Origin: Octopus sinensis
Lineage: Eukaryota
DNA: 39,235 bases
Assembly: GCF_006345805.1 (NCBI RefSeq)
Contig: NW_021835561.1
Location: 1 to 39,235, forward strand
Direction: 5' to 3'
Positions 1,441 through 34,887 of this stretch are shown piece after piece. The translations under genes and the position numbers were made by a program. Each line of letters begins with the position of its first letter. Within the stretch, counting starts at the first letter, position 1. The notes under the pieces are model-generated. The model searched no databases and was not told the origin of the DNA. It saw only the letters and a list, made by a program, of their open reading frames with translations.

Positions 1441-1480
1441 AACCGTTTCATCTCCAAGAAATCTCTCGACGATAAACCCG
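1441..1480 (+). pseudogene. Copy 1 exon 2, 3'-truncated (NRFISKKSLDDKP)
   Basis: tttcacag|AAC acceptor as in the other copies. After GATAAACCCG the sequence jumps to LINE-derived DNA and the GTAAG donor is missing. Confidence 0.8.
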
Positions 1481-2920
1481 AATCCTGCCTTTGGGTACTC
1501 GGCAGCCAACCAATTCAGTGCACGTTGTTGGTGACCATCAGACGAATTAGGTAGCAGCATGTCGTCTACAAATAACAGTCGACTGATCACGTAGAGATGA
1601 ATTGGGATACCTCTACCACAATGGCTGCGCTGTGGTTTACAGCGTATTCCCCTTGGAAATATTTCAATGTTTGCTGGAAGATCTGTCTTTGATCGTCTAA
1701 AAGGTCGGGTGTACTGTGTCCCGGACAGTAACCTTTAGCACGACAACTTCCCTACATATCGTTTCCTGAAATCTAGTTTAGACTTTTCTATAATTAGAAC
1801 ACACTCTTTGGTTTTGTTTGAAAAAATTGTTATTGTCACCACATATTACCATTGCCTTGGTGTTTTTCCAGAGGTCTCATCGACCTAGCGTACATGGGTT
1901 ACTCAGAGAATACAATCTGTATTTAAGGCTTCTAAAATATCAAGCCGAACCTGCTTTTCACAAGCAGTTTTATCACATTTAAGTGAGTTTAGCTCAAATA
2001 AGCGTTCAAACGAAGAAGAACCTGCCCAAAAAAATAATACAATCACAAATCCATTTCGATGTTCAACTTAATTCAGGAGGGTCACTCTCAATTTGGATGC
2101 AAAAGTCTCCACATTTTTGTTTCTGATCCCAGCATCCACGCCTTACCAATTTCCAGTGTTCGGCAGACTGTAGGAATTTTCAGGTTTTTGGACATTTAGG
2201 TAGTGACGAGTTGACAACTCCACCCCTCCTCTTACCCGAACGTTCAGCAAAGAGTGAAAGATGACCGAAATCTATCAAATACCTCTGTCACCAAGTATTT
2301 CTATACCAGGCACCCTTATAAATATCCCTGTCTTAAAATAATATCTTTACCATAGAGAGGAGAGTGTGTATCCTGCACAGAAGGTTGCTATGACCTGTCC
2401 ATTAAGTTCACTGACGACATTCCTTCCAATCAATCCTTCTCAAGTTTATCAGTGCCAAGGTGTGCACTGAAGTCTCCTTGCAGGACAAATGACTTTACCC
2501 CAAATATATCTAAAGCTGAGGTGAATTTGCTTAGGAAGGATTTGTATTTGACCTCGCTGTTTGCTGCATATACTAACAGCAGCCACAGTGGTCCTCCATA
2601 TTCAGCCTTAGCTTCAAGAGGTGAACCCTCACACCTAGTAGGTTTGACTCAATACTACAATCCGAAAGCTGGGGATTGGGAGTATCCTAATCCCACCTGT
2701 GCAGACATTGTTGGCACCACAGTTGTGTAGTGGAGTTTCAAGCCTATATCCAAGTGTACGCTATCGGAGAAACGAAATTTTATAGAGGAGACACCGATTA
2801 TATCTTACAGGCAGATTATATCTAACAATTTTGACGTTTTAATTCTCAATTATTAAAGGTTGTTTCCCTTCTTGATCTGCTTCGGTTTCCTGAGACCGTC
2901 AATTTTGTACTCCCACCCCA
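1481..2920 (-). mobile_element. Decayed RTE-clade (Expander-like) LINE, endonuclease plus partial RT, in intron 2 of copy 1
   Basis: Minus-strand translation gives AP-endonuclease-like IIGVSS...LVYAANSEV...FVLQGDFSAHLG...ELSTRH. Internal deletions relative to units 2 and 3. Confidence 0.65.
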
Positions 2921-3525
2921 CGCACCCCAGATTAAGTTACAGACTTCTTGCTGGTTGCACCAGTATTGGTTGGTGTGTGCTATACATTTATCGACCGGAC
3001 TCCTTTCCACGAGATCCGGATGCGATGTCTTTTAACTAAATCGACAAATGATTCGGTATGGTTGTTATTTTCATAGTGTAGTTATGATGGCCATATTTGC
3101 GCCGAGCTCCAAACTGATATTTGTAATTGACCGATGAATATTCGCAACTGGCGAATATTCTATCGTTATTCTATTGAGTTTTATCATTATTCTATTGAGA
3201 AGTATATATACTCATACCCAAGTTTACGTATCATACATACATTCGTTCATTGCGGAGACCGATACACATTCTGATATCCTGAGATTAATCTCTCAAATCT
3301 TTGACATCAACGTCACCAACAGGCTCAACAGACAAATGTCTTTTTTCTTTCTTTACAATTTATTCTTATTATTTACATCTTTCGTTCTGACTTTCATTCA
3401 CTCGTTCTTTCTTAAATTCTATATTTCTCTCTTCTCCATCAATTCCTTCCCATCCAACAATCTACTTTGTAAATGATCCCCCAATTCTTTCTTTTAAACT
3501 ACATTATTTCATTTTAATATCACAG

Positions 3526-3600
3526 AACCTGGTCTCGGATCATTGTATACCCGGTGGGGCTGAACAACTTGTCCTCCTTATTCAAACCTTGTATATGACG
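3526..3600 (+). pseudogene. Copy 1 exon 3 (PGLGSLYTRWG*TTCPPYSNLVYD) with nonsense codon
   Basis: cacag|AA acceptor, G|gttagt donor, 75 nt, phase 1-1. TGA at 3561-3563 where copy 3 has AGA (Arg). Confidence 0.85.
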
Positions 3601-5824
3601 GTTAGTATACTTTATATTTCCGACCCCTCATTCTCTTTTGTTTTTCTCTTGTTCTCTTTTTATACCTCTCATTCTCTCTTTTTGTTGCCTCTCTTTCACT
3701 CTCACCCTCTCTCTCACGCACACGCACACACACTTACCCTTTGTCGGGTTGTCTGACATAAACATTCTCAAATCCTTTTATGATATGTCACGTTTCAAAC
3801 GCCTATACCTGTAGACTATACAGACACTACACAAGACTGCTTAACCTTTGTAGGTATTTGGTCAAATCAGAATATTATATGTTGTCTACTACGGACCAAG
3901 TGAAAAGGATGTTGTCTAACCACAGAATATAGATATCTCTACGATAAATTACAGATAGGGGCTGGACTAAAAAAACCACCATGGCGATCAAGAATATCAG
4001 GCTGACCAGCTTTGGATTGTAGATATCAAATACCGAGGCTGCTAACTGGTGATCAATTGTACTGGCTACGGATGGTGGTATTGTACGTGAGTGACCAGAG
4101 CTGAAAAGAGGCCACTTGACTATCATTAACTAGAGTGCCCAATGATCGTAGGTGTGGGCTAAATTGAATAGAGTCTATTAGAATTGATGACAGTGACTGT
4201 AAATTATTAATGAAATGAACGTACAATGTAGAATGAGGACTGGACAAGCCACATGCTGTAACTGATGGAAAAAGCTAAGGACTTTATTCATTAAGTAAAA
4301 TATAGAGAGACTAAATATTAGTGAGAGAACACAACAGAGTACAGAATGCACTTCTCTTCTTCTCCGCCTCACCGAAATCGTCCTATCGCTAAAACCTTGA
4401 TCTTTTCATGCACCACATCACCTCATTAATTATCCAGTATATATTTGTAAGGTAATTACGACACTTCCAATTCAAAACTGCTGCTAGAAACTGCGTCCCC
4501 AATCAAACTTTCATTCCTTTAAAATACTCTGAATCTGCTCTTTATAAACCCTACACGTATAATTTATCGGTCGCCGACTCCATCACCAAAAATATCCCCG
4601 TTCACTCGTGAACACCTTTTCTACTTCGGGTAAACACGAGTATATGCGTTACCGAATTCCTTTCTTTTTCTCCTTCTTTATTTACATTCACGCAAAAACA
4701 CTTCCCCATGCAAACCTACATAATAATCCACATCGTAGCCCCAAATACTTACCCGTATACACACAACATATATATACATATACCTACATATATATTATAT
4801 ATATAATATATATTAATATATATTATATATATTATATATTATAATATATATATATATATATAATATATAATATATATATATTGATTCAGATGAATATGTT
4901 ACTTAAGTTGAGGCTCCAGAATTTAGTACGGCATTATCCATACAATTTCAAAGTATGGTGATTAAAATTAAAATAAGCAACGATGATATCCAGAGATAAT
5001 GCAGTACGTTCGTTTCATGCAACTCCATTTAATTCAACAATGCAATCATTACATCAGTTTAAAATTTAGAGCAAATTTCAGCTGCAAAATACTTAGGATT
5101 TAATTAAATTACAACAGATGGACACATTTGTATAATTATACTTAAAATCTCCAAGATATTACATAGAACATGTCTCTATTTCAGCATAGCAGTTACTAAA
5201 ATTATCAAGAAGACTCAGCTTACCACTCACTTTTTGTCTTTATGGGGTCAGTTTTTTAATTTATAGACTAATTACAAATCCTTTGTATATCTAAGCCTGA
5301 GAGAACATAGGGAAGTATCTTTAGGGGAGGGCTTAGGGAGTAGATAGACATTCTAGTTGGTATAGTCATAAAAAATCAAGAGAATTATTATAGCAATACC
5401 ATGAGGTTTAGTAAGGGAAAACTTAAAACAAGGTGTTAGCTGATAATTAAGGGGGTCGCACACTGGCAGACTATTGACAATGAAACGGAAGGTCTTATCA
5501 TATATTATAGTTAAATATTTTAAACAATGTTGCTATGAATACAGTTGATGTTTAAGGTTTTCCAAAGGATTATTAAGAAAAATATTATAACAAAAGGATA
5601 GAAATTGTTCAACATGTTCTTTGTGTATCTCCTTAACTTCTTGGAAATTTTAGGTATAATTATACTAATGTGTCAATCTGTTTTAATTTAATTAAATCCT
5701 ATGTATTGGTGCAACTGAAAATTGCTCTATATTTTAAATTGATGTAATGATTGTATTGTTCAATTAAATGGAGTTGCATGAAACAATCGTACTGCATTAT
5801 CTCTGGAAATCCTTGTTGCTTACT

Positions 5825-5879
<55 letters not shown>

Positions 5880-6088
5880 GAAGAGAATGCTAATGCACAG
5901 CTATGATCTAATGCATACAGCAACACTGCTTACACTCACATAAACACTATCATATATACACCAAAATTCGACCACACGTTACTAAACATGACTTCCTTTC
6001 GGTCTCAAATTGTAATGAATGTTTCCGTTATTTCATATATAATTTTGCTTAATATCTTTTTTACTTGATTTATTCTTACCAATTCTAG

Positions 6089-6587
6089 GTGTGGCTGGTG
6101 GACAGCATTATTCCCATACTGGTGGGGAAGTAATCTCTTATGTCTGCCTAATGATCCCATTTGGGCAAATTATACTACAGAAGTTGAAAAATGTGATTAC
6201 ATTTATGGCAGTGAATATCAATTAGATTTATACCCAACGAATAAACTCTTTTCATTTGCTAACGCCGAATCAATTTTTGAACACAACGTTCCGTGCGCTG
6301 TCTGTTTGACACGACAACCTGCTGTTGTAATGATGTTACCAGCCAGGACACAGTGTTACCCTGGTTGGACAGCTGAGTATTCAGGATATTTGATGACCGA
6401 GCGTTATGATCATAAGGGCAGACATGAACATGTGTGTGTGGACTATGCACCAGAAGCTGATCCAGCAGGTTACAGGAACGAAAACGGAGCTCTACTGTAT
6501 TTCGTTCAGGCTGCTTGTGGTTCATTGCCATGTCCACCGTATGTCAATGGTCGAGAATTAACCTGCGTTGTGTGCAGTAAATACTGA
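6089..6587 (+). pseudogene. Copy 1 exon 4, Cys-rich domain, frameshifted
   Basis: ttctag|GT acceptor. 499 nt versus 500 nt in copy 2. The downstream frame (ORF 6306-6587) encodes PARTQCYPGW...CGSLPCPPY...CVVCSKY. Confidence 0.85.
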
Positions 6588-6653: not shown

Positions 6654-8264
6654 GCAATATATACGTTTCTTGTAATTGTGTTACGCAATATTTTATCCGA
6701 CTAATATATGTCGTTAAATAAATTGCTGCTACAAGTTTTCAGAAAATATTCAAAACGAAACAACAGAGACGTCATAGAATGTGACAAATAGCTTAACAGA
6801 ACGATGTAATCCTCAGGGAATGATTCTAGAATACATTGTATGAGGTTCAATTTATCAAATTTAAATGTTGAAATAAAATGATTATTCGTTTAAATGTGTG
6901 TTGTATTCCGTCTTAAAATGAAAACAATCCCAAAATGAAACACCTCCGTACAAATATATCACTCTTTCATGATCAATCTTCAGAAAACACGATAAAAGCT
7001 TATAACTAACATCACTAAATCATGATGGTTAAAAAAAAAATACTCCCATACGTATCATTGTAACTACCATCGATGCGATGAAAGCTCTGCAATCCAATCA
7101 CGGATATTACCTAATAAAGGATATTTGATATCCACTGAAGAAATACCACAAAATGTTGACTACCTAACTACTTGTCAGGTTACTAACACATTGAAGCTTT
7201 CACGAAACACTTTCGACAAGGGTACAAGTACACGTCCCACGATGAACTATTTTCAACCTACATTCACATATTCCCGCTTTTCTACAAAAATCACACACAC
7301 ACAGCCTCGCATCACATTACACACGCAGCCTCTCATCGTTCCCTGAAATCTTATGTGCCAAAATAAAATATGAAACCACCAAGAAATATGAGTAGACTTC
7401 AGGAACAGCATCAACCGAATCTACAGCAACACCACAAAACATCAAGTTCAACAAATTATCTCCGTCTGTAATATAAAACTATCAAACTCGCAGAAGAGGA
7501 ACTTGCTTCGAGATACATGCATACAATAACTGTAACACACATAAACGACTTAGTAAGGGAAGGAACACCACTTATAAAATATACATTAGGTGGAATCAGT
7601 GCAACATGTTGAGTCTTTCACACTCTACCCAGCATGATTGCTCCTTGTATGTGGGAGTTTGTAGAATGGCTGCCACATAAACGAAGGTATCCGTGGAAAG
7701 AGGGATCTGTGGGTGGCAGCACGTTTTTTGTCCGATTAATTGCGTGCCATAAGAATGCTCGATTGTGAAAAAGCTAGAGAAAAAAGAATATAATTAAGTA
7801 ATATGAAAGCACAAAATGCCCAACTGACAAATGAATATATGGAAACATTCAACATGGCGTTTCCAGTGAACAGTATTAGCGTCAGTATTAGGCATAAGCA
7901 ATTTTTAGGTTCGTTAAAATGTGCTAATGGCATATTTCAAACTCTAAACGCAAATTCTGTGCAAAAAGCTGCAAAAACAGCATATCAGTCCAGTGCTGCT
8001 CCCTATCGGGTTCCAGTACAGTCGTTATCAAAAGAAAATACCGAAGAAGGGAATATCTGGACAAACTTAAAGCCATAGCTTTAACTTAAACATAGTCAAC
8101 AACAACGAGTAAGTGACGCCATTAGAGCGCCAGGCTGGAGTCTGTCGTGAGTTACCTCCCTTCGGTATTTCTCTTTCATAAATTCTTCGCTAGAGAAGTT
8201 GACTTCAACCTTGTGCTCCAATAGTAACTGCGGTCGCTCGTACGTGCCCGCATTTTCCGCATAT

Positions 8265-8640: not shown

Positions 8641-9050
8641 GTTGAACGAAATACTTCCCACAATGAATATTAAAACATTTTCCCAATAATTACAAATAAA
8701 ATTAAATAACAACATTAGTAAATAAATATATCATAATATATCCAGAAACAGGAATCATTTCACTTTACACGTGTCTCTCATTCATCAACATATTTTGCTA
8801 ATTATTGTGTGACAATATCAAACCATCTCTTTCCAATAATTAAACCTGTCAGACAAGTTCACGCCCGCTTTTACAGTTCCACCAATCGCATTGGTTCATA
8901 AATTTACGATAAGATCTATGCCAGAGCTGGGTCGTTGTGCGCTCAATAAATACGTGGAATTCAGTTACAGGTCTTCAGCTTAAACCTCGCATCTCGATCT
9001 TTTGTTGAAGCCACACGAAGTATCACGTACGACCGACAACTGTCACCAGA

Positions 9051-9194
9051 ATGGATTTCGCACAACTGTCCAGGAATATTTCGCAGCGTTATTCCATTTC
9101 TTCTCTCATAGCTTTTGGGGTTCTTCTCGTTCTGACGATCGTGATTCTTCATCAAGATTCAAGAATAGGAAAAATGGAAGAGGAATCGAAAACG
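9051..9194 (+). CDS. Copy 2 exon 1: MDFAQLSRNISQRYSISSLIAFGVLLVLTIVILHQDSRIGKMEEESKT (signal anchor/TM)
   Basis: ATG at 9051, 48 codons, ACG|gtaagt donor. Hydrophobic stretch SLIAFGVLLVLTIVIL. Near-identical copy at 24455. Its link to exon 2 is inferred from phase and repeat-unit position. Confidence 0.75.
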
Positions 9195-12180: not shown

Positions 12181-13404
12181 GCAGGCATTTATATAGCACA
12201 CAAGCACCGCGCGCACATAACGCCCACACAACTCCTAAAACCCACACATACACACGCATGTACAAATAGACATACACACCGATACATATACATACACACA
12301 ATATATGCCTACACGCGCACACACACACACACATACACATACGTATACACATATAGATACAGACACACTCACGCACGCAAAACATTGGCACGCAAATGCA
12401 CACACGCACACGAATGCACACACCGAAAACTCACAACCCCACGGATACACGTATATACACCCATATACGCTTACACACACACACATACAAACGCACATGT
12501 ACACGCACACACAACTACACGCACATACGAGATGCACGCACATACATACACACACACACACAAATGAACCCACACATACATCCCATACACACGGCACACA
12601 ATTATACATACACGCACACAATTATACATACATGTATACACACAAACGCAAAGTTATTCGCCACACACCCAAACTCTACACACACACACACGTGTCATCA
12701 TTGCACACATACACACATACAAACACACGCACACATACACTATGTAAAGCACAGTTATTCGCCACACACCCTAACTCTACGCCTACACACACGAACACAC
12801 ACACATGCACACACACACACTACAAACAAAACACACACACGATTCATATACATACACGCACACACACACATACTTCAAACTAGCAGTACCTACTACTTGA
12901 CCTGTGGTAGAGACAAAAAGAGCCACGCCCAAATGCTTCTTCCTTGATCTTAACACTACTAGCCCTACAACACGCAAAGTTTAACAGCCACAACCACACA
13001 CACTTATACACACACATGCACACACAAACTTGTCATTATTGTATACATACACACATACACACACACGAACACGCAGACCTCCGCGCACGCTCTTATCCAC
13101 ACTTACACACACATTCCTCCTCCTCTACCTCTCTCCTATCTTTGAAAGGACTTTTCTTCACCCATTTCCTTCCGGTCATTCAAAATGTGACCACGAGTGT
13201 ACTGTTGGCGATTTTTTTCCCTCTGTCTTCTCTCCTCTGGATCTTTCCTTCTCGTATGTTTCCGACGAAGAATCTCACCCGAAACGTTAAACCCTCCTTC
13301 TTTCCTTTTTTCCTGAGCGTCCAATAATACTATATTTTTCCACGTCCTCGCGTTGTTGTTTTCTGTGCTTTCTTGTTTGGATTAAATTTAACTATATTTA
13401 TACA

Positions 13405-13447
<43 letters not shown>

Positions 13448-13461
13448 GTGTGTGTGTAGAA

Positions 13462-13514
<53 letters not shown>

Positions 13515-13538
13515 TGTGTGTGTGTTTGTGTGTGTGTA

Positions 13539-14204
13539 CAAGCAGACATACCCGGCATTGCTGGGGATTGAAATGGCAAAGTTGGTATATAATATATTCC
13601 AGTCATTTTGAAACAGGTGATATGGGAATGTGAAACATTGACAACAAAACATTTGTAGAGTAAATGCTGGGCTAATTCGACTAAGCAACATTCTATGCGT
13701 CCGTTTGGAGTGTTTCAGGCCCTAACCTGTCATGCAAAATTAGAGCTGGGGTTTCTGTGATTTTTGAACGCACCGAAAAGCTGTCAGTGGATATACTCTC
13801 CTTTGCAGCAGTGTGCGCTGTGTCTAACACGACCCATCATCGGAAATTTTGACACCTCACGTCGGGTTTGTTGTCATACATCACTCATAGAGCAAATTTG
13901 GAGGAACTGTGGTTGTTCATTCGCGGGTACCAGGGAACCATTGAGGGGATAGAACTTTGACGTCGGCGTAAATTCATGTTTATCTATTTTCTTAGATTCA
14001 CTAAACGATGTCATTTGAAATGCAGAGTTGTATTGTCTGATATTGTTCAGAAAATCCTTTGACTTGATGGAAGCACCTTCTAGAAGATTCCTAAAGGGTT
14101 GAGATGGTATTGCCGGCAATGATACCTGTCCGAATATGTTGTCATCTATTGCATTGTTTTAAGTTCTAAACGATAATAAATTCCCTGAAGTTCTATTTAT
14201 ATGA
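13539..14204 (-). mobile_element. Helitron, copy in unit 2
   Basis: Same element (ORF 13874-14119 NIRQYNSAFQMTSF...QPQFLQI). The terminal CTAG is mutated (caag on + strand) and there is a short internal deletion. Confidence 0.75.
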
Positions 14205-14226
14205 TCCTATTTCTATTTTTTCACAG

Positions 14227-14278
14227 AACCGTTTCATCTCCAAGAAATCTCTCGACGATAAACCCGATGACACACCAA
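14227..14278 (+). CDS. Copy 2 exon 2 (NRFISKKSLDDKPDDTP), stalk
   Basis: tttttcacag|AAC ... CCA A|gtaaga, 52 nt, phase 0-1, compatible with exons 1 and 3. Confidence 0.75.
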
Positions 14279-14499
14279 GTAAGAAATAATTTTATGGCTA
14301 AAGTCTTTTACCCGTGTCTCCTTAACCAATGATTTATAATTTCACCAACTTTGAATTAGTTCCACATTACTATCCATATGTCCACAATAATATATACTAA
14401 GACACTTACCTGAATTTCTTTCGAAATATGTTCTACTTTACAATAATTTCCTAAATAAAATGTTATTCATTATACTATGGCATTTATTGTGTGTATATG

Positions 14500-16130
14500 A
14501 GTATATCTGCAGTGCTACGTCGAGAATTGTTTCTGCACGCACGGTGCCCCCGAGTGTGCTCTTCGCCGAGTGTCCGAGGCGGCCGGTACGTTCACTATGA
14601 AAAAATTGGAGTGCTCAGAGCGAGCCACGCCGGCTTGCATACGAAAAGCATGGAATGCCCTCTTCATTTGAGAATCAAATGCCCGAGCTGGCGTTTCACT
14701 GCGTTTATATCTACAATTCAGTATTCTGTCCACTCTTGTGCTTCTAATCATTCGTGAATAGAGACACGAAATAATGATGTTCCACTTTCCTACACATTGC
14801 ATATTTGTCAATCCTACCTTGGGTTACACGGCAGCTAACCCATTCAATGCAAGTTGTTGGTGACCATCAGACGAATCAGGTAGCAGCATGTCGTCCACAA
14901 ATACCAGTCGACCGATCACGTAGAGACGAATTGGGATACCTCTACCACAATGGCTGCGCATATTCAACCAGATCACAAAAAGAATGTGAGAAGGGGCGCT
15001 AACAATGCACACTTCAACTAAGGGAAACCTTCACGTTGAAATTTTTCGACATTTACATAAATACAATCATTTGAACATCCATATAATTATTTTATGGCGA
15101 CAAATATTTGCCCAATAAACTCACCTTCATGGTAAACCATCCACAACATGCCCCAGGGCACGTGATCGTGTGCCTTTTTGTTGTTTTCAGCGTATTCCTA
15201 CTGGAAATGCTTCACTGTTTGCTGGAAGATCTGTCTTTGAACGACTTTCTGGTCGGATGTACTGCGTCCCGGACACGACAATTTCCCTACATAACTTTTC
15301 CTGACATCTAGTGTAGACTTTTCTATAATTAGAACACACTCTTTGGTCTCCGTTTGAAAAAATTGTGATTGTTGATTGTCTCCCCATATTACCATTGCCT
15401 TGGTGTTTTTTCGAGAGGTCCCATCCACCTAGCATACATGGGTCACTCAGAGAATACCATCTGTATTTAAGTTTTCTAAACTATCAAGCCGACCCTGCTT
15501 TTCAGCAGCAGTTTTACCACTTTTAAGTAAATTGAGATCAAATAAGCGTTCAACCGAAGAAGAACCTGCCGAAAATATTATACAATCACGAATCCATTTC
15601 GATGTCCAAGTTCATTCAGGAGGGTCACTCTAAATTTGGATGCAAAAGTCTCCACTGAGGCTTCCAACTGTATTCTGTAGGTCGCACTGGACTTACCAAT
15701 TTCCAATGTTCGGCAGACTGCAGGAATTTTCAGGTTTTTAGACATTTAGGTAGTGACGAATTGATAACTCCACCCCTTCCCGTTACCCGTACGTTCAGCA
15801 AAGAGTGAAAGATGACCGAACTCTATCAGAAACCTCTGTCACCAAGTATTTCTATACCAGGCACCCTTATAAATATCCCTGTCTTAAAATAATATCTATA
15901 CCATGGAGAGGAGAGTGTGTATCCTGCACAGAAGGCTGCTATGACCTCTCCATTAAGTTCACTGACGACATTCCTTCCAATCAATCCTTCTCACGGTTAT
16001 CAGTGCCAAGGTGTGCACTGAAGTCTCCTTGCAGGACAAATGACTTTACCCCAAATATATCTAAAGCTGAGGTGAATTTGCTTAGGAAGGATTTGTATTT
16101 GACCTCGCTGTTTGCTGCATATACTTACAG
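14500..16130 (-). mobile_element. Decayed RTE-clade LINE in intron 2 of copy 2
   Basis: RT-like relics GDQRVCSNYRKVY, CPGRSTSDQ and RLVFVDDMLL (degenerate YADD region), plus the endonuclease GDF region. Many stops and frameshifts. Confidence 0.7.
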
Positions 16131-16384
16131 TACGATAAGGGCTCCAAGGAATAATCATACCCCGTCATCCATCGAGAGGGATCAAAGCAGTTACCTCCGG
16201 ATCATGAGTGGAGGTGTCCATTCGGGAAATATATATCAGTCTCCACCAATCTTAATCTGTGATGCATTGGAAGGGAATACATAATATGCGTGTTCCAGGA
16301 CCCCGAAGCAGTTCCAGAAGGGATCAACCGTTCATAATTGAGAATTAGACTGTCAAACCCGGACGGTACAAAACGCTGCCTGTT

Positions 16385-16660
16385 ATATATAATTGGTGTC
16401 TCCTCAAGAAAGCTTCGTTACTTCGGAGGCGTACACTTGGAAGTAGGTTGGAAACTCCACCGTGCAGGTGTGGTGCCAACTATGTCAGCACAGGCGGAAG
16501 TGGGATGCAGCTTTGGATATATTTGGGGTAAAGTCATTTGTCTTACAAGGAGACTTCCGTGCACACTTTGGCGCTGATAACCGCAAGAAGTATTGATTGG
16601 GTGGAATGGCGTCACACACCTTAATGGGGTGGTCATACTAGTCTTCTGGCAGGAAACGGA
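16385..16660 (+). mobile_element. Second, opposite-orientation fragment of the RTE-type endonuclease region
   Basis: IIGVSSRKLRYFGGVHLEVGWKLHRAGVVPTMSAQAEVG. 16508-16583 is the reverse complement of 15994-16069. Confidence 0.6.
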
Positions 16661-17124
16661 CTCTCTTCGCGCCCAAACACCAAGCTGATATTTGTAATTG
16701 ACCAATCAGGTGCCAAGAATTGATAATATGGCCTACATATCTATAAAAGAAGGACTTTATCATCATTACGCTCACAAATATATATATATATATACTCACA
16801 TCCAAGTTCAACTACAAAATAAACATCTGTTCTTAAGGGAGACAAATACACATTCTGATATTCTGAGATTAATCTCTCAATTCGTTGACATCAACATCAA
16901 CAACAGGCTCAATAGACAAATGACAAATTTTCTTCGTTTAAAATTTATTCTTAGCGAATCATTTACTTCTTTCATTCTGATTTTCATTCATTCACTCATT
17001 CTTTTTCTCTTAAATTCTAAATATCTCTCCTCTCTATCAATTCCTTCTAAGCCAACAACTTTCTTTGTATAGGATTCAAGAATTCTTTCTTTTATACTTA
17101 ATTGTTTCATTTTAAATTTCACAG

Positions 17125-17199
17125 AACCTGGTCCCGGATCATTGTATACCCGGTGGGGAATAACAACTTGTCCTCCTTATTCAAACCTTGTATATGACG
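17125..17199 (+). CDS. Copy 2 exon 3 (PGPGSLYTRWGITTCPPYSNLVYD)
   Basis: cacag|AA acceptor, G|gttagt donor. Carries the YxRWGxxxCP motif typical of SSCC-like domains. Confidence 0.85.
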
Positions 17200-18930: not shown

Positions 18931-18969
<39 letters not shown>

Positions 18970-19204: not shown

Positions 19205-19704
19205 GTGTGGCTGGTGGACAATGGTTCGATCATACAGGTGGCGGAAGTAATCTCTTATGTCTACCTAACGACCCCATTTAGGCCAATTATACTACAGGAG
19301 AAGAAAAAGGTGGTTACATTGCTGGCAGTGAATATCAACTGGAATTCTACCCAACTAATAAACTCTTTTCTTTTGCTAACGCTAAATCACTTCATGATCA
19401 CAACGTTCCGTGCGCTGTCTGTTTGACACGACAACCTGCTGTTGTTATGATGTTACCAGCCAGGACAAAGTGTTACCCTGGTTGGACAGCTGAGTATTCG
19501 GGATATTTGATGTCCGGTTATTTCGGGCATAAGGGCAGACATGAATATGTGTGTGTAGATTATGCACCAGAAGCTGATCCAGCAGGTTACAGAAACGAAG
19601 ATGGAGCTCTATTATATTTCGTTCAGGCTGCTTGTGGTTCATTGCCATGTCCACCGTATGTCCATGGTCAAGAATTATCCTGCGTTGTGTGCAGTAAATA
19701 TTGA
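19205..19704 (+). CDS. Copy 2 exon 4, Cys-rich SSCC-like NC1 domain, in frame but with TAG at 19279-19281
   Basis: ctag|GT acceptor. Reads VAGGQWFDHTGGGSNLLCLPNDPI*ANYTTGEEKGGYIAGSEYQ...CVVCSKY, stop at 19702-19704. Confidence 0.8.
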
Positions 19705-19814
19705 GCAGAAATTAAATTCGGTTCCATATGAAAATATCTCTGTGAATTACATGAAGTAACATAAAATTTTAATTGTGTTACCTAATATTTTCTTTAAAGC
19801 ATGTCTATCGTTAC

Positions 19815-19820
19815 AATAAA
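19815..19820 (+). terminator. Candidate polyadenylation signal of copy 2
   Basis: AATAAA ~110 nt after the stop, conserved at 34998-35003 in copy 3. Confidence 0.45.
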
Positions 19821-20069
19821 CTGTTGTACTAGTTTACAGAAGATATTCAAACAATACAAAAGAGGCGACGTAGAATGCCAGAAATATCCTCAAAAACAAG
19901 AAAAATCTAAATCTGTCGAAATGATTCTAGAAAAAACATTTTGTAAGATTTCAGTTTATCAAACTTATCGTTGAAATAAAATGTTATTTTGTTTAACAGT
20001 ATTTTGTCTTCTGTCTCATGATTCAACAAACCCCTAATAAAGAACCACCATAGAATTATATCAGCTTTT

Positions 20070-20330
20070 CATGCACAGCCTTAGAAAATCTAATACTCGA
20101 CGCTACTATCTCAGACATCTTGGTTTTCAAATTACAACTCAGATTCTGACAAGGAGCCATGAACCGCTACATTACTTAGCACAGAATTTAACTGATTCTT
20201 TCAACAACAACCAAATACTTCCACACAATCCATTCTATTTTCCGTTATTAATCAGGAAAGCTTTCCGTTCCATTCCTACCCCATATCTCATAAAACCTAT
20301 TTATCGTCTACTTTAGAAATATCACAAAAT
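20070..20330 (+). mobile_element. Possible decayed non-LTR RT fragment (also 35250-35510)
   Basis: HLGFQ...LHYLAQNLTDSFN...LIRKAFRSIP loosely follows the QxGFR...LDxxKAFDxV RT motifs. Confidence 0.4.
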
Positions 20331-22929: not shown

Positions 22930-23410
22930 TATGTATGTATGTATGGATGGATGGATGGATGTAAGTATGTAGGCATGTATGTATTGATTAAATATGTATG
23001 TATATATATGTATGTATGTGTATATGTGTCTATCGATATATACATGCTTATATTCAAACATACATGCATGTATACATGTATACATACATGTATGTATAAA
23101 TATATGTGTACATGTATGTATGTATGTATGAAAGTATGTATGTATGTATGTATGTATGTATGTATGTATGTATGTATGTATGTATGTATGTATGTATGTG
23201 TGTATGTATGTATATATATGTGTGTGTATGTAAGTATATATGTATGTATGTATGGGGGTATGTATGTTTGTATATATGTATGTATATACGTGAGTGTGTA
23301 TGTATGCATGTATGTATGTATGTATGTATGTATGTATGTGTGTATGTATGTATGTTTGTATGTATGCTTGTATGTATGTGTGCATGTATGTATGTATATA
23401 TGTATGTATG
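22930..23410. repeat. (TATG)n-rich tract
   Basis: Visible repeat; the counterpart in unit 3 is interrupted by the RTE insertion. Confidence 0.9.
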
Positions 23411-24045: not shown

Positions 24046-24454
24046 CTGTTGAACGAAATACTTCCCGCCCTGAAAATTAAAACGGTTTCCCAATAATAAC
24101 TAAAAATTTAAATAACAACATCAGTAAATAAATATATCATAATATATCCAGAAACAGGAATCATTTCACTTTACACGTGTCTCTCATTCATCAAAATATT
24201 TTGCTAATTATTGTGTGACAATATCAAACCATCTTTTCCAATATTTAAACCTGTCAGACACGTTCACACCCGCTTTTACGGTTCCACCAATCGCATTGGT
24301 TCATAAATTTACGATAAGATCTATGCCAGAGCTGGTTGTTGTGCGCTCAATAAATACGTGGAATTCAGTTACAGGTCTTCAGCTTAAACCTCGCATCTCG
24401 ATCTTTTGTTGAAGCCACACGAAGTATCACGTACGACCGACAACTGTCACCAGA

Positions 24455-24598
24455 ATGGATTTCGCACAACTGTCCAGGAATATTTCGCAGCGTTATTCCA
24501 TTTCTTCTCTCATAGCTTTTGGGGTTCTTCTCGTTCTGACGATCGTGATTCTTCATCAAGATTCAAGAATAGGAAAAATGGAAGAGAAATCAAAAACG
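24455..24598 (+). CDS. Copy 3 exon 1 (signal anchor/TM)
   Basis: ATG at 24455, 48 codons, ACG|gtaagt. Differs from copy 2 protein only at EEESKT/EEKSKT. Confidence 0.75.
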
Positions 24599-26870: not shown

Positions 26871-28339
26871 CAACTGTGATCACAGAGATATATGTATCAT
26901 ACGCACACAATACGCGCACACACACACACACACACACACGTACATACACACACACCAGCACGGATGTCCACATATACCTTTAACGAACAATACTCATACA
27001 GATACGCACACACTTATACACACATGGGCACAGACACACACGCACATACACGTACTTAAGCGCACACACGCACACAAGCACACACACGCACATTACGCCC
27101 ACACAACTTTTAAAAAAACCATACACACACGCATGCACAAATTCACATACACACCGATACATATACATACACGCAATATATGCCTACACGCACACACACA
27201 CATACACATACGTATCCACATATAGACACAGACACACACACACGCACGCAAAAACATGCGCACACATACGCTCGCACACACGCACACGAATGCACACACC
27301 GAAAACTCACAACCCCATGGATACACGTATATACACAATTATATACACTTACACACATACAAACGCACACGTACACGCACACACAACTACACGCACATAT
27401 AAGACGCACGCGCATACATACACCACACACAAATGTACCCACACGTACGTCCCATACACACGGCACACAATTATACATACATGTATACACACACGCACAG
27501 TTACTCACCACACAAACTCTACGCATACACACACATACACTCAAACACACTAGAAGCAAAACACACACATACACACACACACGTGTCATCATTGCACACA
27601 TACCCACATACCCACATACACACACACGTACACATACACTAAGTAAAGCACAGTTATTCGCCACACAACCTAACTCTACGCCTACTCACAGGAACACACA
27701 CATTCATACACACACACACTACAAACAAAACACACACACGATACATGTACATACACACACATACTTCAAACTAGCAGTACCTAATACTTGACCTGTGGTA
27801 GAGACAAAAGTAGCCACGCCCAATTCCTTCTTCTTAACACTACTAGCCCTACAACACGCAAAGATTAACAGCCACACACACTTACACACACACACACGTG
27901 TCATCATTGCACACATACACACATACACACACACGCACACGCACACGCAGTCCTCCGCGCCCGCACATATCCAAACTTACACACACATTCCTCATCCTCT
28001 ACCACTCTCCTGTCTTTGAAAGAACTTTTCTTCACCCATTTCCTTCCGGTCATTCAAAATGTGGCCGCGTGTGTACCGTTGGCGATTTTTTTCCCTCTGT
28101 CTTCCCTCCTCTGGACCTTTCCTTCTCATAAACGTTAAACCCTCCTTCTTTCCTTCATCGTCCAATAATACTATATTTGTTCCACATCCTCGCGTTGTTT
28201 TTTGTGCTTTCTTGTATGGATTAAATTTAACTATATATATAAATATGTGTATATATATGTATATATATATATATATATATATGAGTGCGTGTGTGTGTAG
28301 AGATATGTGTGTGTATATATATGTGTGTGTGTGTGTGTA

Positions 28340-29014
28340 CTAGCAGACATACCCGTCATTGCTGGGGATTAAAATGGCAAAGTGGGTATATAATATATAC
28401 CAGTCATTTTGAAACAGGTGATACGGGAAAGTGCAACATTGACAACAAAACATTTGTAGAGTAAATGCTGGGCTAACTCGACTAAGCAACATGCTATGCG
28501 TCCGTTTGGAGTGTTTCAGGCCTAACCTGTCATGCAAAATTGGAGGTGGGGTTGTGTGATTTTTGAAGGCACCGAAATGCTGTCAGTGGATATACTCTCC
28601 TTTGCAGCAGTGTGCGCTGTGTCTAACACGACCCATCATCGGAAATTTTGACACCACACGTCAGGTTTGTTGTCCTACACCACTTATAGAGTAAATTTGG
28701 AGGAACTGTGGTTGTTCATTCGCGGTTACCAGGGAACCAATGAGGGGATAGACTTGCCCTTGATCTTTGACGTCGGCGTAAATTCATCTTTATCTATCTT
28801 CTTAGATTCACTATACGATGTCATTTGAAATGCAGAATTATATTCTCTGATATTCTTCAGAAAATCGTTTGACTGGATTGAAGCGCCTTCTAGAAGATTC
28901 CTAAGGGGTTGAGAAGGTATTGTTGGCAATGACTCCTGCCCGAATATGTTGTCATCCATTGTATTGTTTTAAGTTCTATACGATAATAAATGCCCTGAAG
29001 TTCTATTTATATGA
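28340..29014 (-). mobile_element. Helitron, copy in unit 3
   Basis: actagcagacatacccgtcattgctgggg terminus. ORF 28726-28959 NIREYNSAFQMTS. Confidence 0.75.
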
Positions 29015-29036
29015 TGCTATTTCTATTTTTTCACAG

Positions 29037-29088
29037 AACCGTTTCATCTCCAAGAAATCTCTCGACGATAAACCTGATGACACACCAA
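29037..29088 (+). CDS. Copy 3 exon 2 (NRFISKKSLDDKPDDTP)
   Basis: tcacag|AAC ... A|gtaagc, 52 nt. Confidence 0.75.
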
Positions 29089-29309
29089 GTAAGCACTAAT
29101 TTTATGGCTAAAGTATTTTACCCGTGACTCATTAACTAATGGTTTACAATTTTACCAACTTCGAATTAGTTCCACATTATTATCCATATGTCCACAATAA
29201 TATATACTAAGACTGAATTTATTTTAAATATGTTCTACTTTACAATAATTTCTAAATAAAATGTTACTCTAATATACTATGCCATTTATTGTGTGTATAT
29301 GAGTATATC

Positions 29310-31275
29310 TGCAGTGCTACGTCGAGAATTATTTCGGCGCGCACGGTTCCTCTGAGGGAGCTCTTTGCCGAGTGTCCGAGGCGGACGGTACGTTCACTGT
29401 GAAAAACTTAGAGTGCTCAGAGCGAGCCCCACCGGCAGCATACGAAAAGCATGGAATACCCTCTTCATCTGAGAATCAAATGCCCGAGCTGGCGCTTCAC
29501 TGCGTTATATCTACAATTCAGCATTCTGTCCACTCTTGTGTTTCCAATCGTTCGTGAATAGAGACCCGAAATAATGATGTTCCACTTTCCTACACAGTGC
29601 GTATTTGTCAATCCTGCTTTGGGGTACTCGTCAGCCAACCAATTCGGTGCACGTTGTTGGTTGCCATCAGTCGAATCAGGTAGCAGGATGCCGTCTACAA
29701 ATAACAGTCGACCGATCACGTAGAAATGAATTTGGATTCCTCTACCATAATGGCTGCGCATATTCAACCAGATCACGGAAAAAAATGTGAGAAGGGGCAC
29801 TAACAATGCACACTTCAACTAAGTGAAACCTTCACGTTGCAAACTTTCGACTTTTACATAAATACAATCATTTGAACATCTATATAAGTACTTTATGGCA
29901 TCTAGTTTTTGCCCATTAAACTCACCCTCCAGGTAAACCATCCGCAACATGCCCCAGGGCTCGTGATCATGTGCATTTTCGTGTTTATAGCGTATTACCC
30001 TAGGACGTATTTCAACGTTTCTCGAAGATCTATCTCTGACCGACTCTCTGGTCGGGTGTACTCCGTCCAGGACGGTAATCTTGGGAGCGACAACTTCCTA
30101 CATATCTTTTCCAGATATCTAGTGTAGACTTTTCTATAATTTGAACACACTCTTGGGCTCTGTTTGAAAAAATTATGATTGTCACCCCATATTACCATTG
30201 CCTTGGTGTTTTTCCAGAGGTCCCATCAACCTAGCATACATGGGTCACTCAGAGAATACCATCTGTATTTAAGGTTCTAAAATATCAAGCCGGACGTACA
30301 TTTCACCAGCAGCTTTATCACATTTAAGCGAGTTTAGCTCAAATAAGAACCTGCCGAAATAAATTATACAATCACGAATCCTTTGATGTCCAAGTCCATT
30401 CAGGCGGGTCACTCTCAATTTGGATGCAAAAGTCTCCACATTTTTGTTTCTGATCCCAGCATCCACTGCGGCTTCCAACTGTATTCTGTAGGTCGCACTG
30501 GACTTACCAATTTCCAGTGTTCGGCAGACTAGGAATTTTCAGATTTTAGACATTTAGGTTGTGACGAGTTGACAACTCCACCCTTCCTTTACCCGAACGT
30601 TCAGGAAAGAGTGAAAGATGACCGAACACTATCAAAAACCTGTCACCAAGTATTTCTATACCAGGCACCCTTATAAATATCCCTGTCTTAAAATAATATC
30701 TATACCATAGAGAGGAGAGTGTGTATCCTGCACTTAAGGCTGCTATGACCACTCCATTAAGTTCACTGACGACATTCCTTCCAATCAATCCTTCTCACGG
30801 TTATCAGTGCCAAGGTGTGCACTGAAGTCTCCTTGCGGGACAAATGACTTTACCCCAAATATATCTAAAGCTGAGGTGAATTTGCTTAGGAAGGATTTGT
30901 ATTTGAACCCGCTGTTTGCTGCATATACTTACATCAGCCACAGTCGCCCTTCATATTCAGCCTTAGCGTCAAGAGGTGAACCCTCACACCTCGTCGGTTT
31001 CACTCCATAATACAATCCGAAAGCTGGGGATTGAGCGTATCCTAATCCCACCTGTGCAGACATTGTTGGCACCACAGTTGCAAAGAGGAGTTGCAAGTCT
31101 ATATCCAAGTGTACGCTATCGGAGAAACGAAATTTTGTAGAGGAGACACCGATTATATCTTACAGGCAGATTATATCTAACAATTCAGACAGTTTAATTC
31201 TCAATTATTAAAGGTTGTTCCCTTCTTCATCTGCTTTGGTTTCCTGAGACCGTAAATGTTGTGCTACCACCCCAC
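29310..31275 (-). mobile_element. Decayed RTE-clade LINE in intron 2 of copy 3
   Basis: ORF-track relics 29465-29818 (RLLFVDGILL), 29995-30198 (RVCSNYRKVY) and 30546-30788 (IGRN..ELN...RVELSTRH) follow the APE-RT order. Confidence 0.7.
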
Positions 31276-31851
31276 ACACCCCAGATTAAGTTGCTGACTG
31301 CACCCGTATTGGATGAGGTGTGCTATATATTTATCAAACGGACTCCTCTACTCGAGATCCGGATGCGATGTCTTTTAACTAAATCGACAAATGATGCGGT
31401 ATGGTTGTTATTTTCATATTGTAGTTATGATGGCCTTATTTGCGCCGAGCTCCAAACTGATATTTGTAATTGACCGATGAATATTCGCACCTGGTGAATA
31501 TTTTACCATTATTCTATTGAGAAGTATATATACTCATACCCAAGTTTACGTATCATACATACATCCGTTCATACCGGAGACCGATACACATTCTGATATT
31601 CTGAGATTAATCTCTCAAATCTTTGACATCAACGTCACCAACAGGCTCAACAGACAAATGTCTTTTTTCTTTCTTTACAATTTATTCTTATTATTTACAT
31701 CTTTCGTTCTGACTTTCATTCATTCACTCGTTCTTTCTTAAATTCTATATTTCTCTCTTCTCCATCAATTACTTCCCATCCTACATCCTACTTTGTAAAT
31801 GATCCCCCAATTCTTTCTTTTAAACTACATTATTTCATTTTAATTTCACAG

Positions 31852-31926
31852 AACCCGGTCTCGGATCATTGTATACCCGGTGGGGCAGAACAACTTGTCC
31901 TCCTTATTCAAACCTTGTATATGACG
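31852..31926 (+). CDS. Copy 3 exon 3 (PGLGSLYTRWGRTTCPPYSNLVYD)
   Basis: cacag|AA and G|gttagt, intact YTRWGRTTCP. Confidence 0.85.
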
Positions 31927-33032
31927 GTTAGTATACTTTATATTTCTGACCCCTCATTCTCTTTTTGTCTTTCTCTTGCTCTCTTTTTATACCTCTCATT
32001 CTCTCTTTTTGTTACCTCTCTTTCCCTATCATCCTCTCTCTCACGCACACGCACACACACTCACCCTTTGTCGTGTTGTCTGACATAAACATTCTCAAAT
32101 CCTCTTATGATATGTCACGTTTGAAACGTCTATACCTGTAGACTATACAGACACTACACAAGACTGCTTACTCCTTTGTGGGTATTTGGTCAAATCAGAA
32201 TATTATATGTTGTCCACTACGGACCAAGTGAAAAGGATGCTAACTGGTGATCAATTGTACAGGCTATGGATGGTGGTATTGTACGTGAGTGACCAGAGCT
32301 GAAAGTGGCCGCTTGACAATCATTAACTAGAGTGCACAATGATCGTAGGTGTGGGCTAAATTGAAAAGAGTCTATTAGAATTGATGACAGTGACTGTAAA
32401 TGGTTAATGGAATGAACGCACAACGTAGAATGAGGACTGGACAAGCCACGTACTGTAACTGATGGAAAAAGCTAAGGACTTTATTCATTAAGTAAAATAG
32501 AGAGAGACTAAATATTAGTGAGAGAACAGAACAGAGTACAGAATGCACTTCTATTCTTCTCCCCCTCACCGAAATCGTCCTATCGCTAAAACCTTGCTCT
32601 TTTCATGCACCACATCACCTCATTAATTATCCAGTATATCTTTTAAGGTAATTATGACACTTCCAATTCAAAACTGCTGCTACAAACTGCGTCCCCAATC
32701 AACCTTACGTTCCTTAAAAATGCTCTGTATCTGCTCTTTATAAACCCTACACGTATATTTTATCGGTCGCCGACTCCATCACCAAAAATATCCCCGTTCA
32801 CTCGTGAACACCTTTTCCATTTCGGGTAAACACGAGTACATGCGTTACAGAATTCCTTTCTTTTTCTCCTTCTATTAACATCCACGCAAATACACTTCCC
32901 CATGCAAACTTACATAATAATCCACGTCGTAACCACAAATACTTACCCGTATACACTCAACATATATATACCTATTCCTACATATATTATTTATATATAT
33001 ATATATATATATATAATTTATATATATAATTT

Positions 33033-33086
<54 letters not shown>

Positions 33087-33427
33087 ATTATATATATATA
33101 TGTGTGTGTGTCTGTGTGTATGTATATGTATATATATATAATATATATAGATTCGGATGAATATGGTACTTAAGTTGAGGCTCCAGAATTTAGTACGGCA
33201 TTATCCATACAATTTCAAAGTAAGGGGATTAAAATTAAAATAAGCAAAGATGATATCCAGAGATAATGCAGTACGTTCGTTTCATGCAACTCCATTTAAT
33301 TGAACAATACAATCATTACATCAGTTTAAAATTTAGAGCAATTTTCAGCTGCAAAAATGTCGGATTTAATTAAATTACAACAGATGGACACATTTGTATA
33401 ATTATACTTAAAATTTCCAAGATATTA

Positions 33428-33968
33428 CAGAGAACATGTTGTCTCTACTTCAGCATAGCAGTTACTAAAATTATCAAGAAGACTCAGCTTACCACTGATT
33501 TTTTGTCTTTATGGTGTCAGTTTTAATTTATAGACTAATTAAATCCTTGTATATAAGGCTGAGAGATAGGCTGAGAGAACATAGGGCAGTATCTGTTAGG
33601 GGGAGGGCTCAGGCAGTAGATAGACATTGTAGTTGGTATAATTATAAAATAATCAAGAATATTATAAGCAATACCAGGAGGTAGTAAGGGGAAAACTTAA
33701 AACAAGGTGTTAGATGATAATTAAGGGGGTCGCACACTGGCAGACTATTGACAATGAAACGGAAGGTCTTATCATATATTATAGTTAAATATTTTAAACA
33801 ATGTTGCTTTGAATACAGTTGAAGTTTAGGGTTTTCCAAAGTATTATTTAGAAGAATATTATAACAAAAGGATAGAAATTGTTGAATATTTTTTCTATTC
33901 ATAAGTATTCATAAATTTCTTGATAATTTTATTAATTTCTATGCTGAAGTAGAGACATGTTCTTGTGT
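33428..33968. mobile_element. Candidate MITE-like element with ~46-bp imperfect terminal inverted repeats
   Basis: 33432-33480 and 33917-33962 are imperfect reverse complements, with TA dinucleotides just outside. No coding capacity. Confidence 0.3.
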
Positions 33969-34407
33969 ATCTCCTTAACTTCTTTGAGATTTTAGGTATA
34001 ATTATACTAATGTGTCAATCTGTTTTAATTTATTATATCCTATGTATTTGTGCAGCTGAAGATTGCTCTATATTTTAAATTGATTTAATGATTGTATTGT
34101 TCAATTATATGGAGTTGCATGCATGAAACAATCGTACTGCATTATCTCTGGATATCCTTGTTGCTTACTTCGAAATATATATATATATATATATATATAT
34201 GAAGAGAATGCAAATGCACAGCTATGATATCAAGCATACACACAACACACAGCTTACACTCACGTAAACACTAATATATACACCACAATTCGTTCACACG
34301 CGAGTAAACATGACTTCTTTTAAGTGAAAAATTGTAATGAATGTTCCGTTATTTCATATATTTTTCTTATTATCTTTTTTTACTTGATTTATTCTTACCA
34401 ATTCTAG

Positions 34408-34887
34408 GTGTGGTTGGTGGACAATTTTATGACCACACAGGTGGTGGAAGTAATCTCTTGTGTTTACCTAACGACCCCATTTGGGCCAATTATACAACAG
34501 AAGTTGAAGAAGGTGGTTACATTTATGGCAGTGAATATCAATTAACTCTTTTCTTTTGCTAACGCTAAATCACTTCATCAACACAACGTTCCGTGCGCTG
34601 TCTGTTTGACACGTCAACCTGCTGTTGTTATGATGTTACCAGCCAGGACACAGTGTTACGCTGGTTGGACAGCTGAGTATTCAGGATATTTGATGGCCGA
34701 ACATCATAATCATGAGGGCAGACATGATTATGTGTGTGTGGATTATGCACCAGAAGCTGATCCAGGTGGTTACAGAGACGAAAATGGAGCTTCATTATAT
34801 TTCGTTCAGGCTTCTTGTGGTTCGTTGCCATGTCCACCGTATGTCAATGGTCAAGAATTAACCTGCGTTGTGTGCAGTAAATATTGA
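34408..34887 (+). pseudogene. Copy 3 exon 4 with 20-nt deletion
   Basis: 480 nt versus 500. caatta/actctt is joined where copy 1 has gatttatacccaacgaataa in between. The downstream frame (34606-34887) is intact. Confidence 0.85.

What the first reader, a model, noticed from the sequence alone, without database searches (positions are those of the whole stretch)
1441..34887. Tandem array of collagen-less, membrane-anchored SSCC/NC1-domain genes
Seen: three head-to-tail copies of a four-exon gene (short N-terminus, one hydrophobic segment, ~32-aa charged stalk, 10-Cys domain), with no Gly-X-Y repeat in any exon I can find. The window starts inside intron 1 of copy 1 and ends in the TG tract that precedes a unit, so there may be four or more copies. 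Known: spongin short-chain collagen-related NC1 domains are homologous to collagen IV NC1, widespread in invertebrates and largely uncharacterised. Inference: this is an expanded family of type II membrane or shed receptor/lectin-like proteins, not structural collagen.
Basis: partly seen in the sequence, partly recalled or inferred. Interest (0 to 1): 0.7.

Follow-up and report, generated by a model that had tools for sequence, protein, structure and literature searches.

The report
Broken octopus collagen-less NC1 gene array
The window holds three tandem copies of an octopus gene for a membrane-anchored, collagen-free relative of the collagen IV end domain, a family already annotated in octopus genomes, but as sequenced all three copies are broken by stop codons or frameshifts.

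Summary
There are three head-to-tail units (periods 13.1 and 15.2 kb, 81-94% identical). Each carries the same four-exon gene with canonical splice sites: 144+52+75+500 nt, giving 256 aa. The protein has an N-terminal hydrophobic anchor, a charged linker of about 37 aa and a 10-Cys domain. No Gly-X-Y run occurs in any frame.

Copy 1 has lost the exon 2 donor, has a TGA in exon 3 and a 1-bp deletion in exon 4. Copy 2 has TGG>TAG at a conserved Trp. Copy 3 has a 20-bp deletion in exon 4.

Related array units in O. sinensis and O. vulgaris are intact at all these sites. Two of those units read through as 256 aa, and one O. vulgaris unit has its own 8-bp deletion. Apart from the lesions, the window copies are as conserved as intact paralogs, so the damage is recent, allelic or an assembly fault.

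The family is annotated as 'short-chain collagen C4-like' in Octopus and Argonauta. Its domain is a derived spongin-type NC1. Pfam C4 finds nothing, hhalign gives E 1.4e-5, and the Foldseek top hits are all collagen IV NC1 at TM about 0.45. A receptor or lectin role is untested.

The parts
1..6587 (+). Copy 1 (exon 1 lies upstream of the window): a multiply disabled unit
   Evidence: Self-blastn; exon mapping
1441..1481 (+). Copy 1 exon 2, truncated. The last 11 nt and the GT donor are lost in a 543-bp deletion relative to copy 2 (14268-14810)
3526..3600 (+). Copy 1 exon 3, with an in-frame TGA at 3561-3563 (AGA in copy 3)
6089..6587 (+). Copy 1 exon 4 (499 nt), with a 1-bp deletion between 6125 and 6126 that shifts the frame
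9051..9194 (+). Copy 2 exon 1: ATG, N-terminal region and hydrophobic anchor (48 codons, phase 0)
14227..14278 (+). Copy 2 exon 2 (charged linker, 52 nt)
17125..17199 (+). Copy 2 exon 3 (start of the NC1-like domain). The conserved Arg/Lys that follows RWG in the YTRWGR motif is replaced by Ile (ATA, 17160-17162)
19205..19704 (+). Copy 2 exon 4 (500 nt), with TAG at 19279-19281 replacing the conserved Trp of DPIWANY (codon 116)
24455..24598 (+). Copy 3 exon 1. It differs from copy 2 at 2 of 144 nt, and the stretch from 70 nt upstream of the ATG is identical for more than 200 nt
29037..29088 (+). Copy 3 exon 2
31852..31926 (+). Copy 3 exon 3 (intact)
34408..34887 (+). Copy 3 exon 4 (480 nt). 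A 20-bp deletion between 34543 and 34544 shifts the frame and gives a premature stop at 34560-34562
34888..39235 (+). Spacer and TG/TATG microsatellites upstream of a fourth unit whose exon 1 lies beyond the window

Best explanation
This is a stretch of an octopod tandem array of 'short-chain collagen C4-like' genes.

Shown: an intact unit encodes a 256-aa protein built from a short N-terminal region, one hydrophobic segment, a disordered charged linker, and a 187-residue beta-rich domain with 10 Cys and no collagen triple helix. The domain is a derived spongin-type relative of collagen IV NC1.

Inferred: residues 15-33 act as a signal anchor with the N-terminus in the cytoplasm, and the 10 Cys form five disulfides.

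Shown: all three units in this window are disabled by independent lesions, so as sequenced they are pseudogenes. Copies 2 and 3 could at most produce truncated 115-aa and 144-aa anchor-plus-stub products.

Shown: outside the lesions the copies are as well conserved as intact paralogs.

Inferred from that: the inactivations are recent, which fits birth-and-death turnover in a redundant array.

Weakly inferred, for intact members: the protein is inserted with the domain outside the cell, then displayed or shed. The domain serves as a binding or oligomerising module with four variable loops on a fixed scaffold.
For: - Array and exon structure.
- Lesions are unique to the window copies. Seven comparison exon 4 sequences from O. 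sinensis and O. vulgaris are intact at those sites.
- Intact 771-nt units exist in O. sinensis (L002 24533-42127) and O. vulgaris (L006 10001-22822). One O. vulgaris unit (L004 10001-22415) carries its own 8-bp frameshift.
- Each window copy has only one private change at columns that are invariant across 23 octopod paralogs. Annotated paralogs have 0-4.
- Scaffold dN/dS is 0.15-0.27 for window copies against intact copies, and 0.21 between intact copies.
- Full-length annotated orthologs exist in four octopod species.
- A 1104-nt transcript-like contig carries anchor, linker and domain in one ORF.
- AF2 gives a helix over residues 16-54, disorder over 46-67, and a confident beta-rich domain.
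- NC1 relationship: the top 26 and top 33 Foldseek PDB hits are all collagen IV NC1 at probability 0.75-1.0. hhalign gives E 1.4e-5 and is co-linear over the whole domain.
- The 10-Cys pattern (7 shared with collagen IV plus 3 unique) matches the published description of spongin NC1 (PMC5395295).
- A peptide of an O. vulgaris family member was found in the ink proteome (PMC10142993).
Against: - I cannot inspect reads, so assembly errors or null alleles on one haplotype are not excluded. Three of three copies broken next to so little other decay is striking.
- The source species and exact locus were not identified. The best DNA identity to sampled O. sinensis and O. vulgaris units is 94-95%.
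- Pfam C4 does not hit, and structural TM-scores are only 0.42-0.46, so the NC1 relationship is remote.
- Topology was judged from hydropathy and charge only, with no dedicated predictor.
- No expression data exist for this locus.
Confidence: 0.78

Rival explanations
1. The genes are functional in the animal. The stop codons, the 1-bp and 20-bp deletions and the exon 2 deletion are assembly or consensus errors, or null alleles on the assembled haplotype.
For: Apart from the lesions, the copies are as conserved as intact paralogs. Exon 1 and its upstream flank are identical between copies 2 and 3. Tandem repeats rich in microsatellites are hard to assemble.
Against: There are five lesions of four kinds: two nonsense substitutions, a 1-bp deletion outside a pure homopolymer, a 20-bp deletion and a 543-bp deletion. 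These do not look like typical consensus errors. An independent assembly of O. vulgaris also has a frameshifted unit, so decay in this array is real elsewhere.
Confidence: 0.15
2. Copy 2 is rescued at the RNA level. A-to-I editing of the UAG at 19279-19281 would restore UGG (Trp), the conserved residue, and yield a full 256-aa protein.
For: From established knowledge, coleoid cephalopods recode extensively and UAG is the triplet ADAR prefers. The rest of copy 2 is open.
Against: Exon 4 RNA shows no unusual structure (z = 0.22, 57 of 100 shuffles fold as well). Copy 2 also carries Arg>Ile at the conserved basic residue (Arg/Lys) that follows RWG. The neighbouring copies are broken by lesions that editing cannot fix. 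A plain G>A mutation is simpler.
Confidence: 0.03
3. These are true short-chain collagens whose Gly-X-Y exons were missed.
For: Cnidarian relatives do carry Gly-X-Y repeats upstream of the same domain (P0181, P0190).
Against: No Gly-X-Y run of 4 or more triplets occurs in any frame of the 39 kb. Annotated octopod orthologs and a transcript-like contig go directly from linker to domain. Only 22 of 356 retrieved relatives have such runs.
Confidence: 0.01

Closest known systems
Octopus/Argonauta 'short-chain collagen C4(-like)' genes (e.g. the O. vulgaris 256-aa protein P0121, and O. sinensis LOC115221790)
   Same: They share the same four exons, the same 256-aa architecture and the same tandem arrangement. 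P0121 is 90% identical to the conceptual copy 2 protein, and array DNA is 86-95% identical.
   Different: The window copies carry stops and frameshifts, and no identical protein is on record.
Spongin short-chain collagens (Exposito 1991; Aouacheria 2006; Fidler 2017, PMC5395295)
   Same: They share a C-terminal 10-Cys NC1-like domain (7 Cys shared with collagen IV plus 3 unique) and lack the HSQ motifs. Similarity to cnidarian family members that do carry collagen repeats is strong (E about 1e-50).
   Different: The window genes have no collagenous Gly-X-Y segment. The N-terminus is a long hydrophobic anchor plus charged linker rather than a signal peptide plus triple helix.
Collagen IV NC1 domain (Pfam C4, PF01413; PDB 1LI1, 1M3D)
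   Same: Both have a two-lobed beta-rich fold, and NC1 structures are the only significant structural hits. The CxxC ends of both lobes and the CP.GW..GY motif align co-linearly.
   Different: There is no Pfam hit. The domain is 187 residues rather than about 229, has 10 Cys rather than 12, and lacks HSQ. TM-scores are 0.42-0.46. It is not attached to a triple helix.

Membership tests
Spongin short-chain collagen (SSCC) family | C-terminal spongin-type NC1-like domain with about 10 conserved Cys | tested here: met
   Cnidarian family members that carry collagen repeats (P0181, P0190) are hit at E about 1e-50, and many relatives are source-named 'short-chain collagen C4(-like)'. The 10 Cys are invariant or nearly so in alignments A5 and A6. 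The Cys pattern agrees with PMC5395295.
Spongin short-chain collagen (SSCC) family | Short collagenous (Gly-X-Y) domain N-terminal to the NC1-like domain | tested here: not met
   No Gly-X-Y run of 4 or more triplets occurs in any frame. Octopod orthologs lack it. Pfam Collagen is absent.
Collagen IV NC1 (Pfam C4, PF01413) | Match to the Pfam C4 profile | tested here: not met
   No hit even at E<=10 for the exon translations or for six full-length relatives. True collagen IV hits all carry PF01413.
Collagen IV NC1 (Pfam C4, PF01413) | Sequence homology detectable by profile-profile comparison | tested here: inconclusive
   hhalign gives probability 80% and E 1.4e-5 over 37 core columns. The alignment is co-linear over 179 columns when relaxed. 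hmmsearch against PDB sequences gives only E 1.2.
Collagen IV NC1 (Pfam C4, PF01413) | NC1 fold | tested here: inconclusive
   Foldseek's top 33 PDB hits are all NC1, with probability 0.92-1.0 for the first 29. TM-scores are 0.42-0.46 and rmsd is about 9.5 A for the domain-only model, which has pLDDT 87.
Collagen IV NC1 (Pfam C4, PF01413) | Twelve Cys and the HSQ motifs | tested here: not met
   The domain has 10 Cys. The aligned positions read RWGR and LPAR instead of HSQ.
Intact protein-coding gene | Uninterrupted ORF across all exons with usable splice sites | tested here: not met
   All three copies are interrupted.
Type II (signal-anchor) membrane protein | Single uncleaved N-terminal hydrophobic segment with the N-terminus in the cytoplasm | tested here: inconclusive
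   There is a 19-residue core with KD 2.67, preceded by a 14-aa region containing two Arg. No small-residue cleavage motif follows it. AF2 predicts a helix over residues 16-54. No dedicated signal-peptide or topology predictor was available.
Lectin or receptor families | Homology to a known carbohydrate-binding or receptor domain | tested here: not met
   No Pfam family was found. The only lectin among the structural hits has E 4.2 and probability 0.01.

The most novel reading that the evidence does not exclude
Octopods may have turned the spongin-type NC1 module into a large, rapidly turning-over family of membrane-displayed or shed binding proteins. These would have four variable loops on a fixed five-disulfide scaffold, encoded in tandem arrays that continually gain and lose copies. 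The three dead units here would be the losing side of that process. A narrower variant is that copy 2's UAG is recoded to Trp by A-to-I editing.
Probability: 0.12. Interest if true: 0.6.

Novelty: new member of a known kind. Interest (0 to 1): 0.3.

Why it matters
The family is large and uncharacterised. There are 4,616 clusters at 50% identity with E<=1e-3, and most retrieved relatives lack collagen repeats. The collagen-less, anchor-bearing octopod form is annotated in genome databases, but none of the papers my searches found describes it. Knowing that this stretch is made of dead or null copies matters for two reasons. It prevents a consensus protein from being treated as a real gene product. 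It also shows that the array evolves by birth and death. In itself, a run of pseudogenised members of an annotated family is ordinary.

Tried and rejected
- Pfam on the exon translations and on full-length relatives found nothing relevant.
- A profile search of PDB sequences gave collagen IV NC1 only at E 1.2.
- I tried to identify the source species by looking for identical proteins and by DNA identity to four O. vulgaris loci and one O. sinensis locus. The best match was 95% and no protein was identical. The sampled O. sinensis and O. vulgaris loci are also no more than 95.5% identical to each other, so the window's species stays unresolved.
- I tested for relaxed constraint in the window copies and found none.
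- I tested for positive selection in the variable patches. dN/dS was about 0.9 with raised dS, so it is not demonstrable, and the patches were chosen after the fact.
- I looked for RNA structure around the TAG that could support editing and found none.
- Pfam on repeated intronic ORFs and on a possible retroelement tail gave no hits.
- The full-length AF2 model gave misleadingly low TM-scores (about 0.2) because of the N-terminal helix. A domain-only model was used instead.
Full report
**What is in the window.** The window is AT-rich eukaryotic DNA full of TG, TA and TATG microsatellites. Self-comparison shows three same-strand units that are 81-94% identical over their whole length. Window 1-6987 matches about 12750-20090 and about 27650-35270, and the spacers match as well.

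**Gene model.** The closest database proteins are octopus proteins named 'short-chain collagen C4-like'. Mapping them back by tblastn, followed by DNA alignment of the three copies, defines four exons with canonical AG/GT sites and compatible phases.

| Exon | Length | Content | Copy 1 | Copy 2 | Copy 3 |
|---|---|---|---|---|---|
| E1 | 144 nt | ATG, N-terminal region, hydrophobic segment | outside window | 9051-9194 | 24455-24598 |
| E2 | 52 nt | charged linker | 1441-1481 (truncated) | 14227-14278 | 29037-29088 |
| E3 | 75 nt | start of domain | 3526-3600 | 17125-17199 | 31852-31926 |
| E4 | 500 nt | rest of domain, stop | 6089-6587 | 19205-19704 | 34408-34887 |

- Residues 15-33 (SISSLIAFGVLLVLTIVIL) have a Kyte-Doolittle mean of 2.67.
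- The following 37 residues are rich in Lys, Asp, Pro and Ser.
- The domain has ten Cys.
- No frame of the 39 kb contains a run of four or more Gly-X-Y triplets.

**The twist: no copy is intact**.
- **Copy 1.** Exon 2 is cut after 1481 by a 543-bp deletion that removes its last 11 nt and the donor. Exon 3 has TGA at 3561-3563. Exon 4 has a 1-bp deletion between 6125 and 6126.
- **Copy 2.** The frame is open except for TAG at 19279-19281, which replaces the Trp of the conserved DPIWANY motif. It also has Ile in place of the conserved basic residue (Arg/Lys) that follows RWG in the YTRWGR motif.
- **Copy 3.** A 20-bp deletion between 34543 and 34544 shifts the frame and gives a stop five codons later.
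- Copies 2 and 3 could at most make truncated 115-aa and 144-aa products.

**Comparison with other octopus loci.**
- Seven exon 4 sequences fetched from the related arrays of O. sinensis (L002) and O. vulgaris (L003, L004, L006) are intact at all of these positions.
- Complete 771-nt units read through in O. sinensis (L002 24533-42127) and in O. vulgaris (L006 10001-22822, which encodes P0121).
- One O. vulgaris unit (L004 10001-22415) has its own 8-bp frameshift. Decay of single units is therefore not peculiar to this window.

**How old are the lesions?** They appear to be young.
- At alignment columns that are invariant among 23 octopod paralogs, each window copy has one private change. Annotated paralogs have 0-4.
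- Outside the variable patches, dN/dS for window copies against intact copies is 0.15-0.27. Between intact copies it is 0.21.
- So there are three possibilities: the inactivations are recent, they are null alleles on the assembled haplotype, or they are assembly faults.
- The lesion types (two nonsense substitutions, a 1-bp deletion, a 20-bp deletion and a 543-bp deletion) argue against simple consensus error. Only reads can settle this.

**What the gene encodes when intact.**
- Full-length proteins of 253-264 aa with the same N-terminus, linker and domain are annotated in O. vulgaris, O. sinensis, O. bimaculoides and Argonauta hians. P0121 is 90% identical to conceptual copy 2.
- There are at least 16 protein clusters on one O. 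sinensis chromosome and at least 10 on one O. vulgaris chromosome.
- A 1104-nt transcript-like contig (SRR8281674) carries anchor, linker and domain in one uninterrupted ORF. This shows that the anchor exon is joined to the domain in mRNA of a relative.
- AlphaFold2 on P0121 (pLDDT 80.7) gives a long helix over residues 16-54, a disordered stretch over 46-67, and a confident beta-rich domain.
- The topology is inferred, not shown. The long N-region with two Arg, the 19-residue core, the absence of a small-residue cleavage motif and the net-negative C-flank favour a signal anchor with the domain outside. A conserved N-Y-T sequon in the domain is consistent with that.
- A peptide of one O. vulgaris family member was reported in the ink proteome (PMC10142993). 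At least some members are therefore made and released.

**Relation to NC1.**
- Pfam C4 does not hit.
- A profile search of PDB sequences gives collagen IV NC1 only at E 1.2.
- Profile-profile comparison against an alignment of 21 collagen IV NC1 domains gives probability 80% and E 1.4e-5 on the CAVC...CP.GW..GY core.
- When relaxed, the alignment is co-linear over the whole domain and pairs eight of the ten Cys.
- Foldseek's significant PDB hits are exclusively collagen IV NC1. For the full-length model these are 26 hits at probability 0.75-1.0. For a domain-only model (pLDDT 87.3, pTM 0.84) they are 33 hits, and TM-scores are 0.42-0.46.
- This fits the literature. Spongin NC1 domains share seven Cys with collagen IV, have three of their own and lack the HSQ motif (PMC5395295). 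They are called 'derived NC1 domains' in Nematostella (PMC12549020).
- The domain is therefore a spongin-type NC1 relative, not a canonical C4 domain.
- The defining collagenous segment of spongins is absent. The same holds for 334 of the 356 relatives retrieved here. The wider family numbers 4,616 clusters at 50% identity.

**Function.** Nothing here tests it.
- Four patches of exon 4 vary strongly among paralogs on an otherwise fixed scaffold.
- Their dN/dS is about 0.9 with raised dS. That shows relaxed constraint and does not demonstrate positive selection.
- No lectin or receptor homology was found.
- The editing idea for copy 2 (UAG to UGG) has no structural support.

**Verdict.** The claim that these are working genes is not, as far as the sequence shows. 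The family is already annotated, so this is a new, broken set of members of a known kind.

Noticed in passing
window 17762-17818 (also 4203-4259 and 32400-32456): Intron 3 holds an ATG-started mini-exon (MVNEMNAECTMWTGQTIDC). It has a GTAAC donor in the same phase as exon 3. It matches the first exon of an O. sinensis model (P0003), so it may be an alternative first exon or an annotation artefact.
   Followed up: partly
window 7078-7229: The odd N-terminus of O. sinensis model P0001 maps downstream of copy 1 exon 4. That 32-kb gene model appears to be stitched across several array units.
   Followed up: partly
window 8980-9190 vs 24384-24594: Exon 1 plus 70 nt upstream is 100% identical between copies 2 and 3 for more than 200 nt, while the surrounding DNA is about 87% identical. 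This could reflect gene conversion or strong constraint on the promoter and 5' end.
   Followed up: no
window 1088-1333, 13874-14119, 28726-28959 (minus strand): An ORF recurs in intron 1 of every unit (...FLNNIR.YNSAFQMTSF...). It has no Pfam match and may be an old transposon fragment.
   Followed up: partly
window 37803-38285: The microsatellite upstream of the fourth unit has an insertion of about 480 bp relative to 23067-23299. It contains an ORF ending ...CGTCQRECLSRIGLHSHSKKC. There was no Pfam hit; from memory it looks like a retroelement tail.
   Followed up: partly
L004 10001-22415 (O. vulgaris OX597833.1): A unit of the O. vulgaris array has its own 8-bp deletion in exon 4. It is annotated as a truncated 186-aa protein (P0045).
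   Followed up: yes
protein family: The spongin-type NC1-like family has 4,616 clusters at 50% identity. Some predicted proteins have up to 9 domain copies. Only 22 of 356 retrieved members contain Gly-X-Y runs, so the name 'collagen' fits few of these sampled relatives (a sample biased toward those closest to the octopus query).
   Followed up: partly
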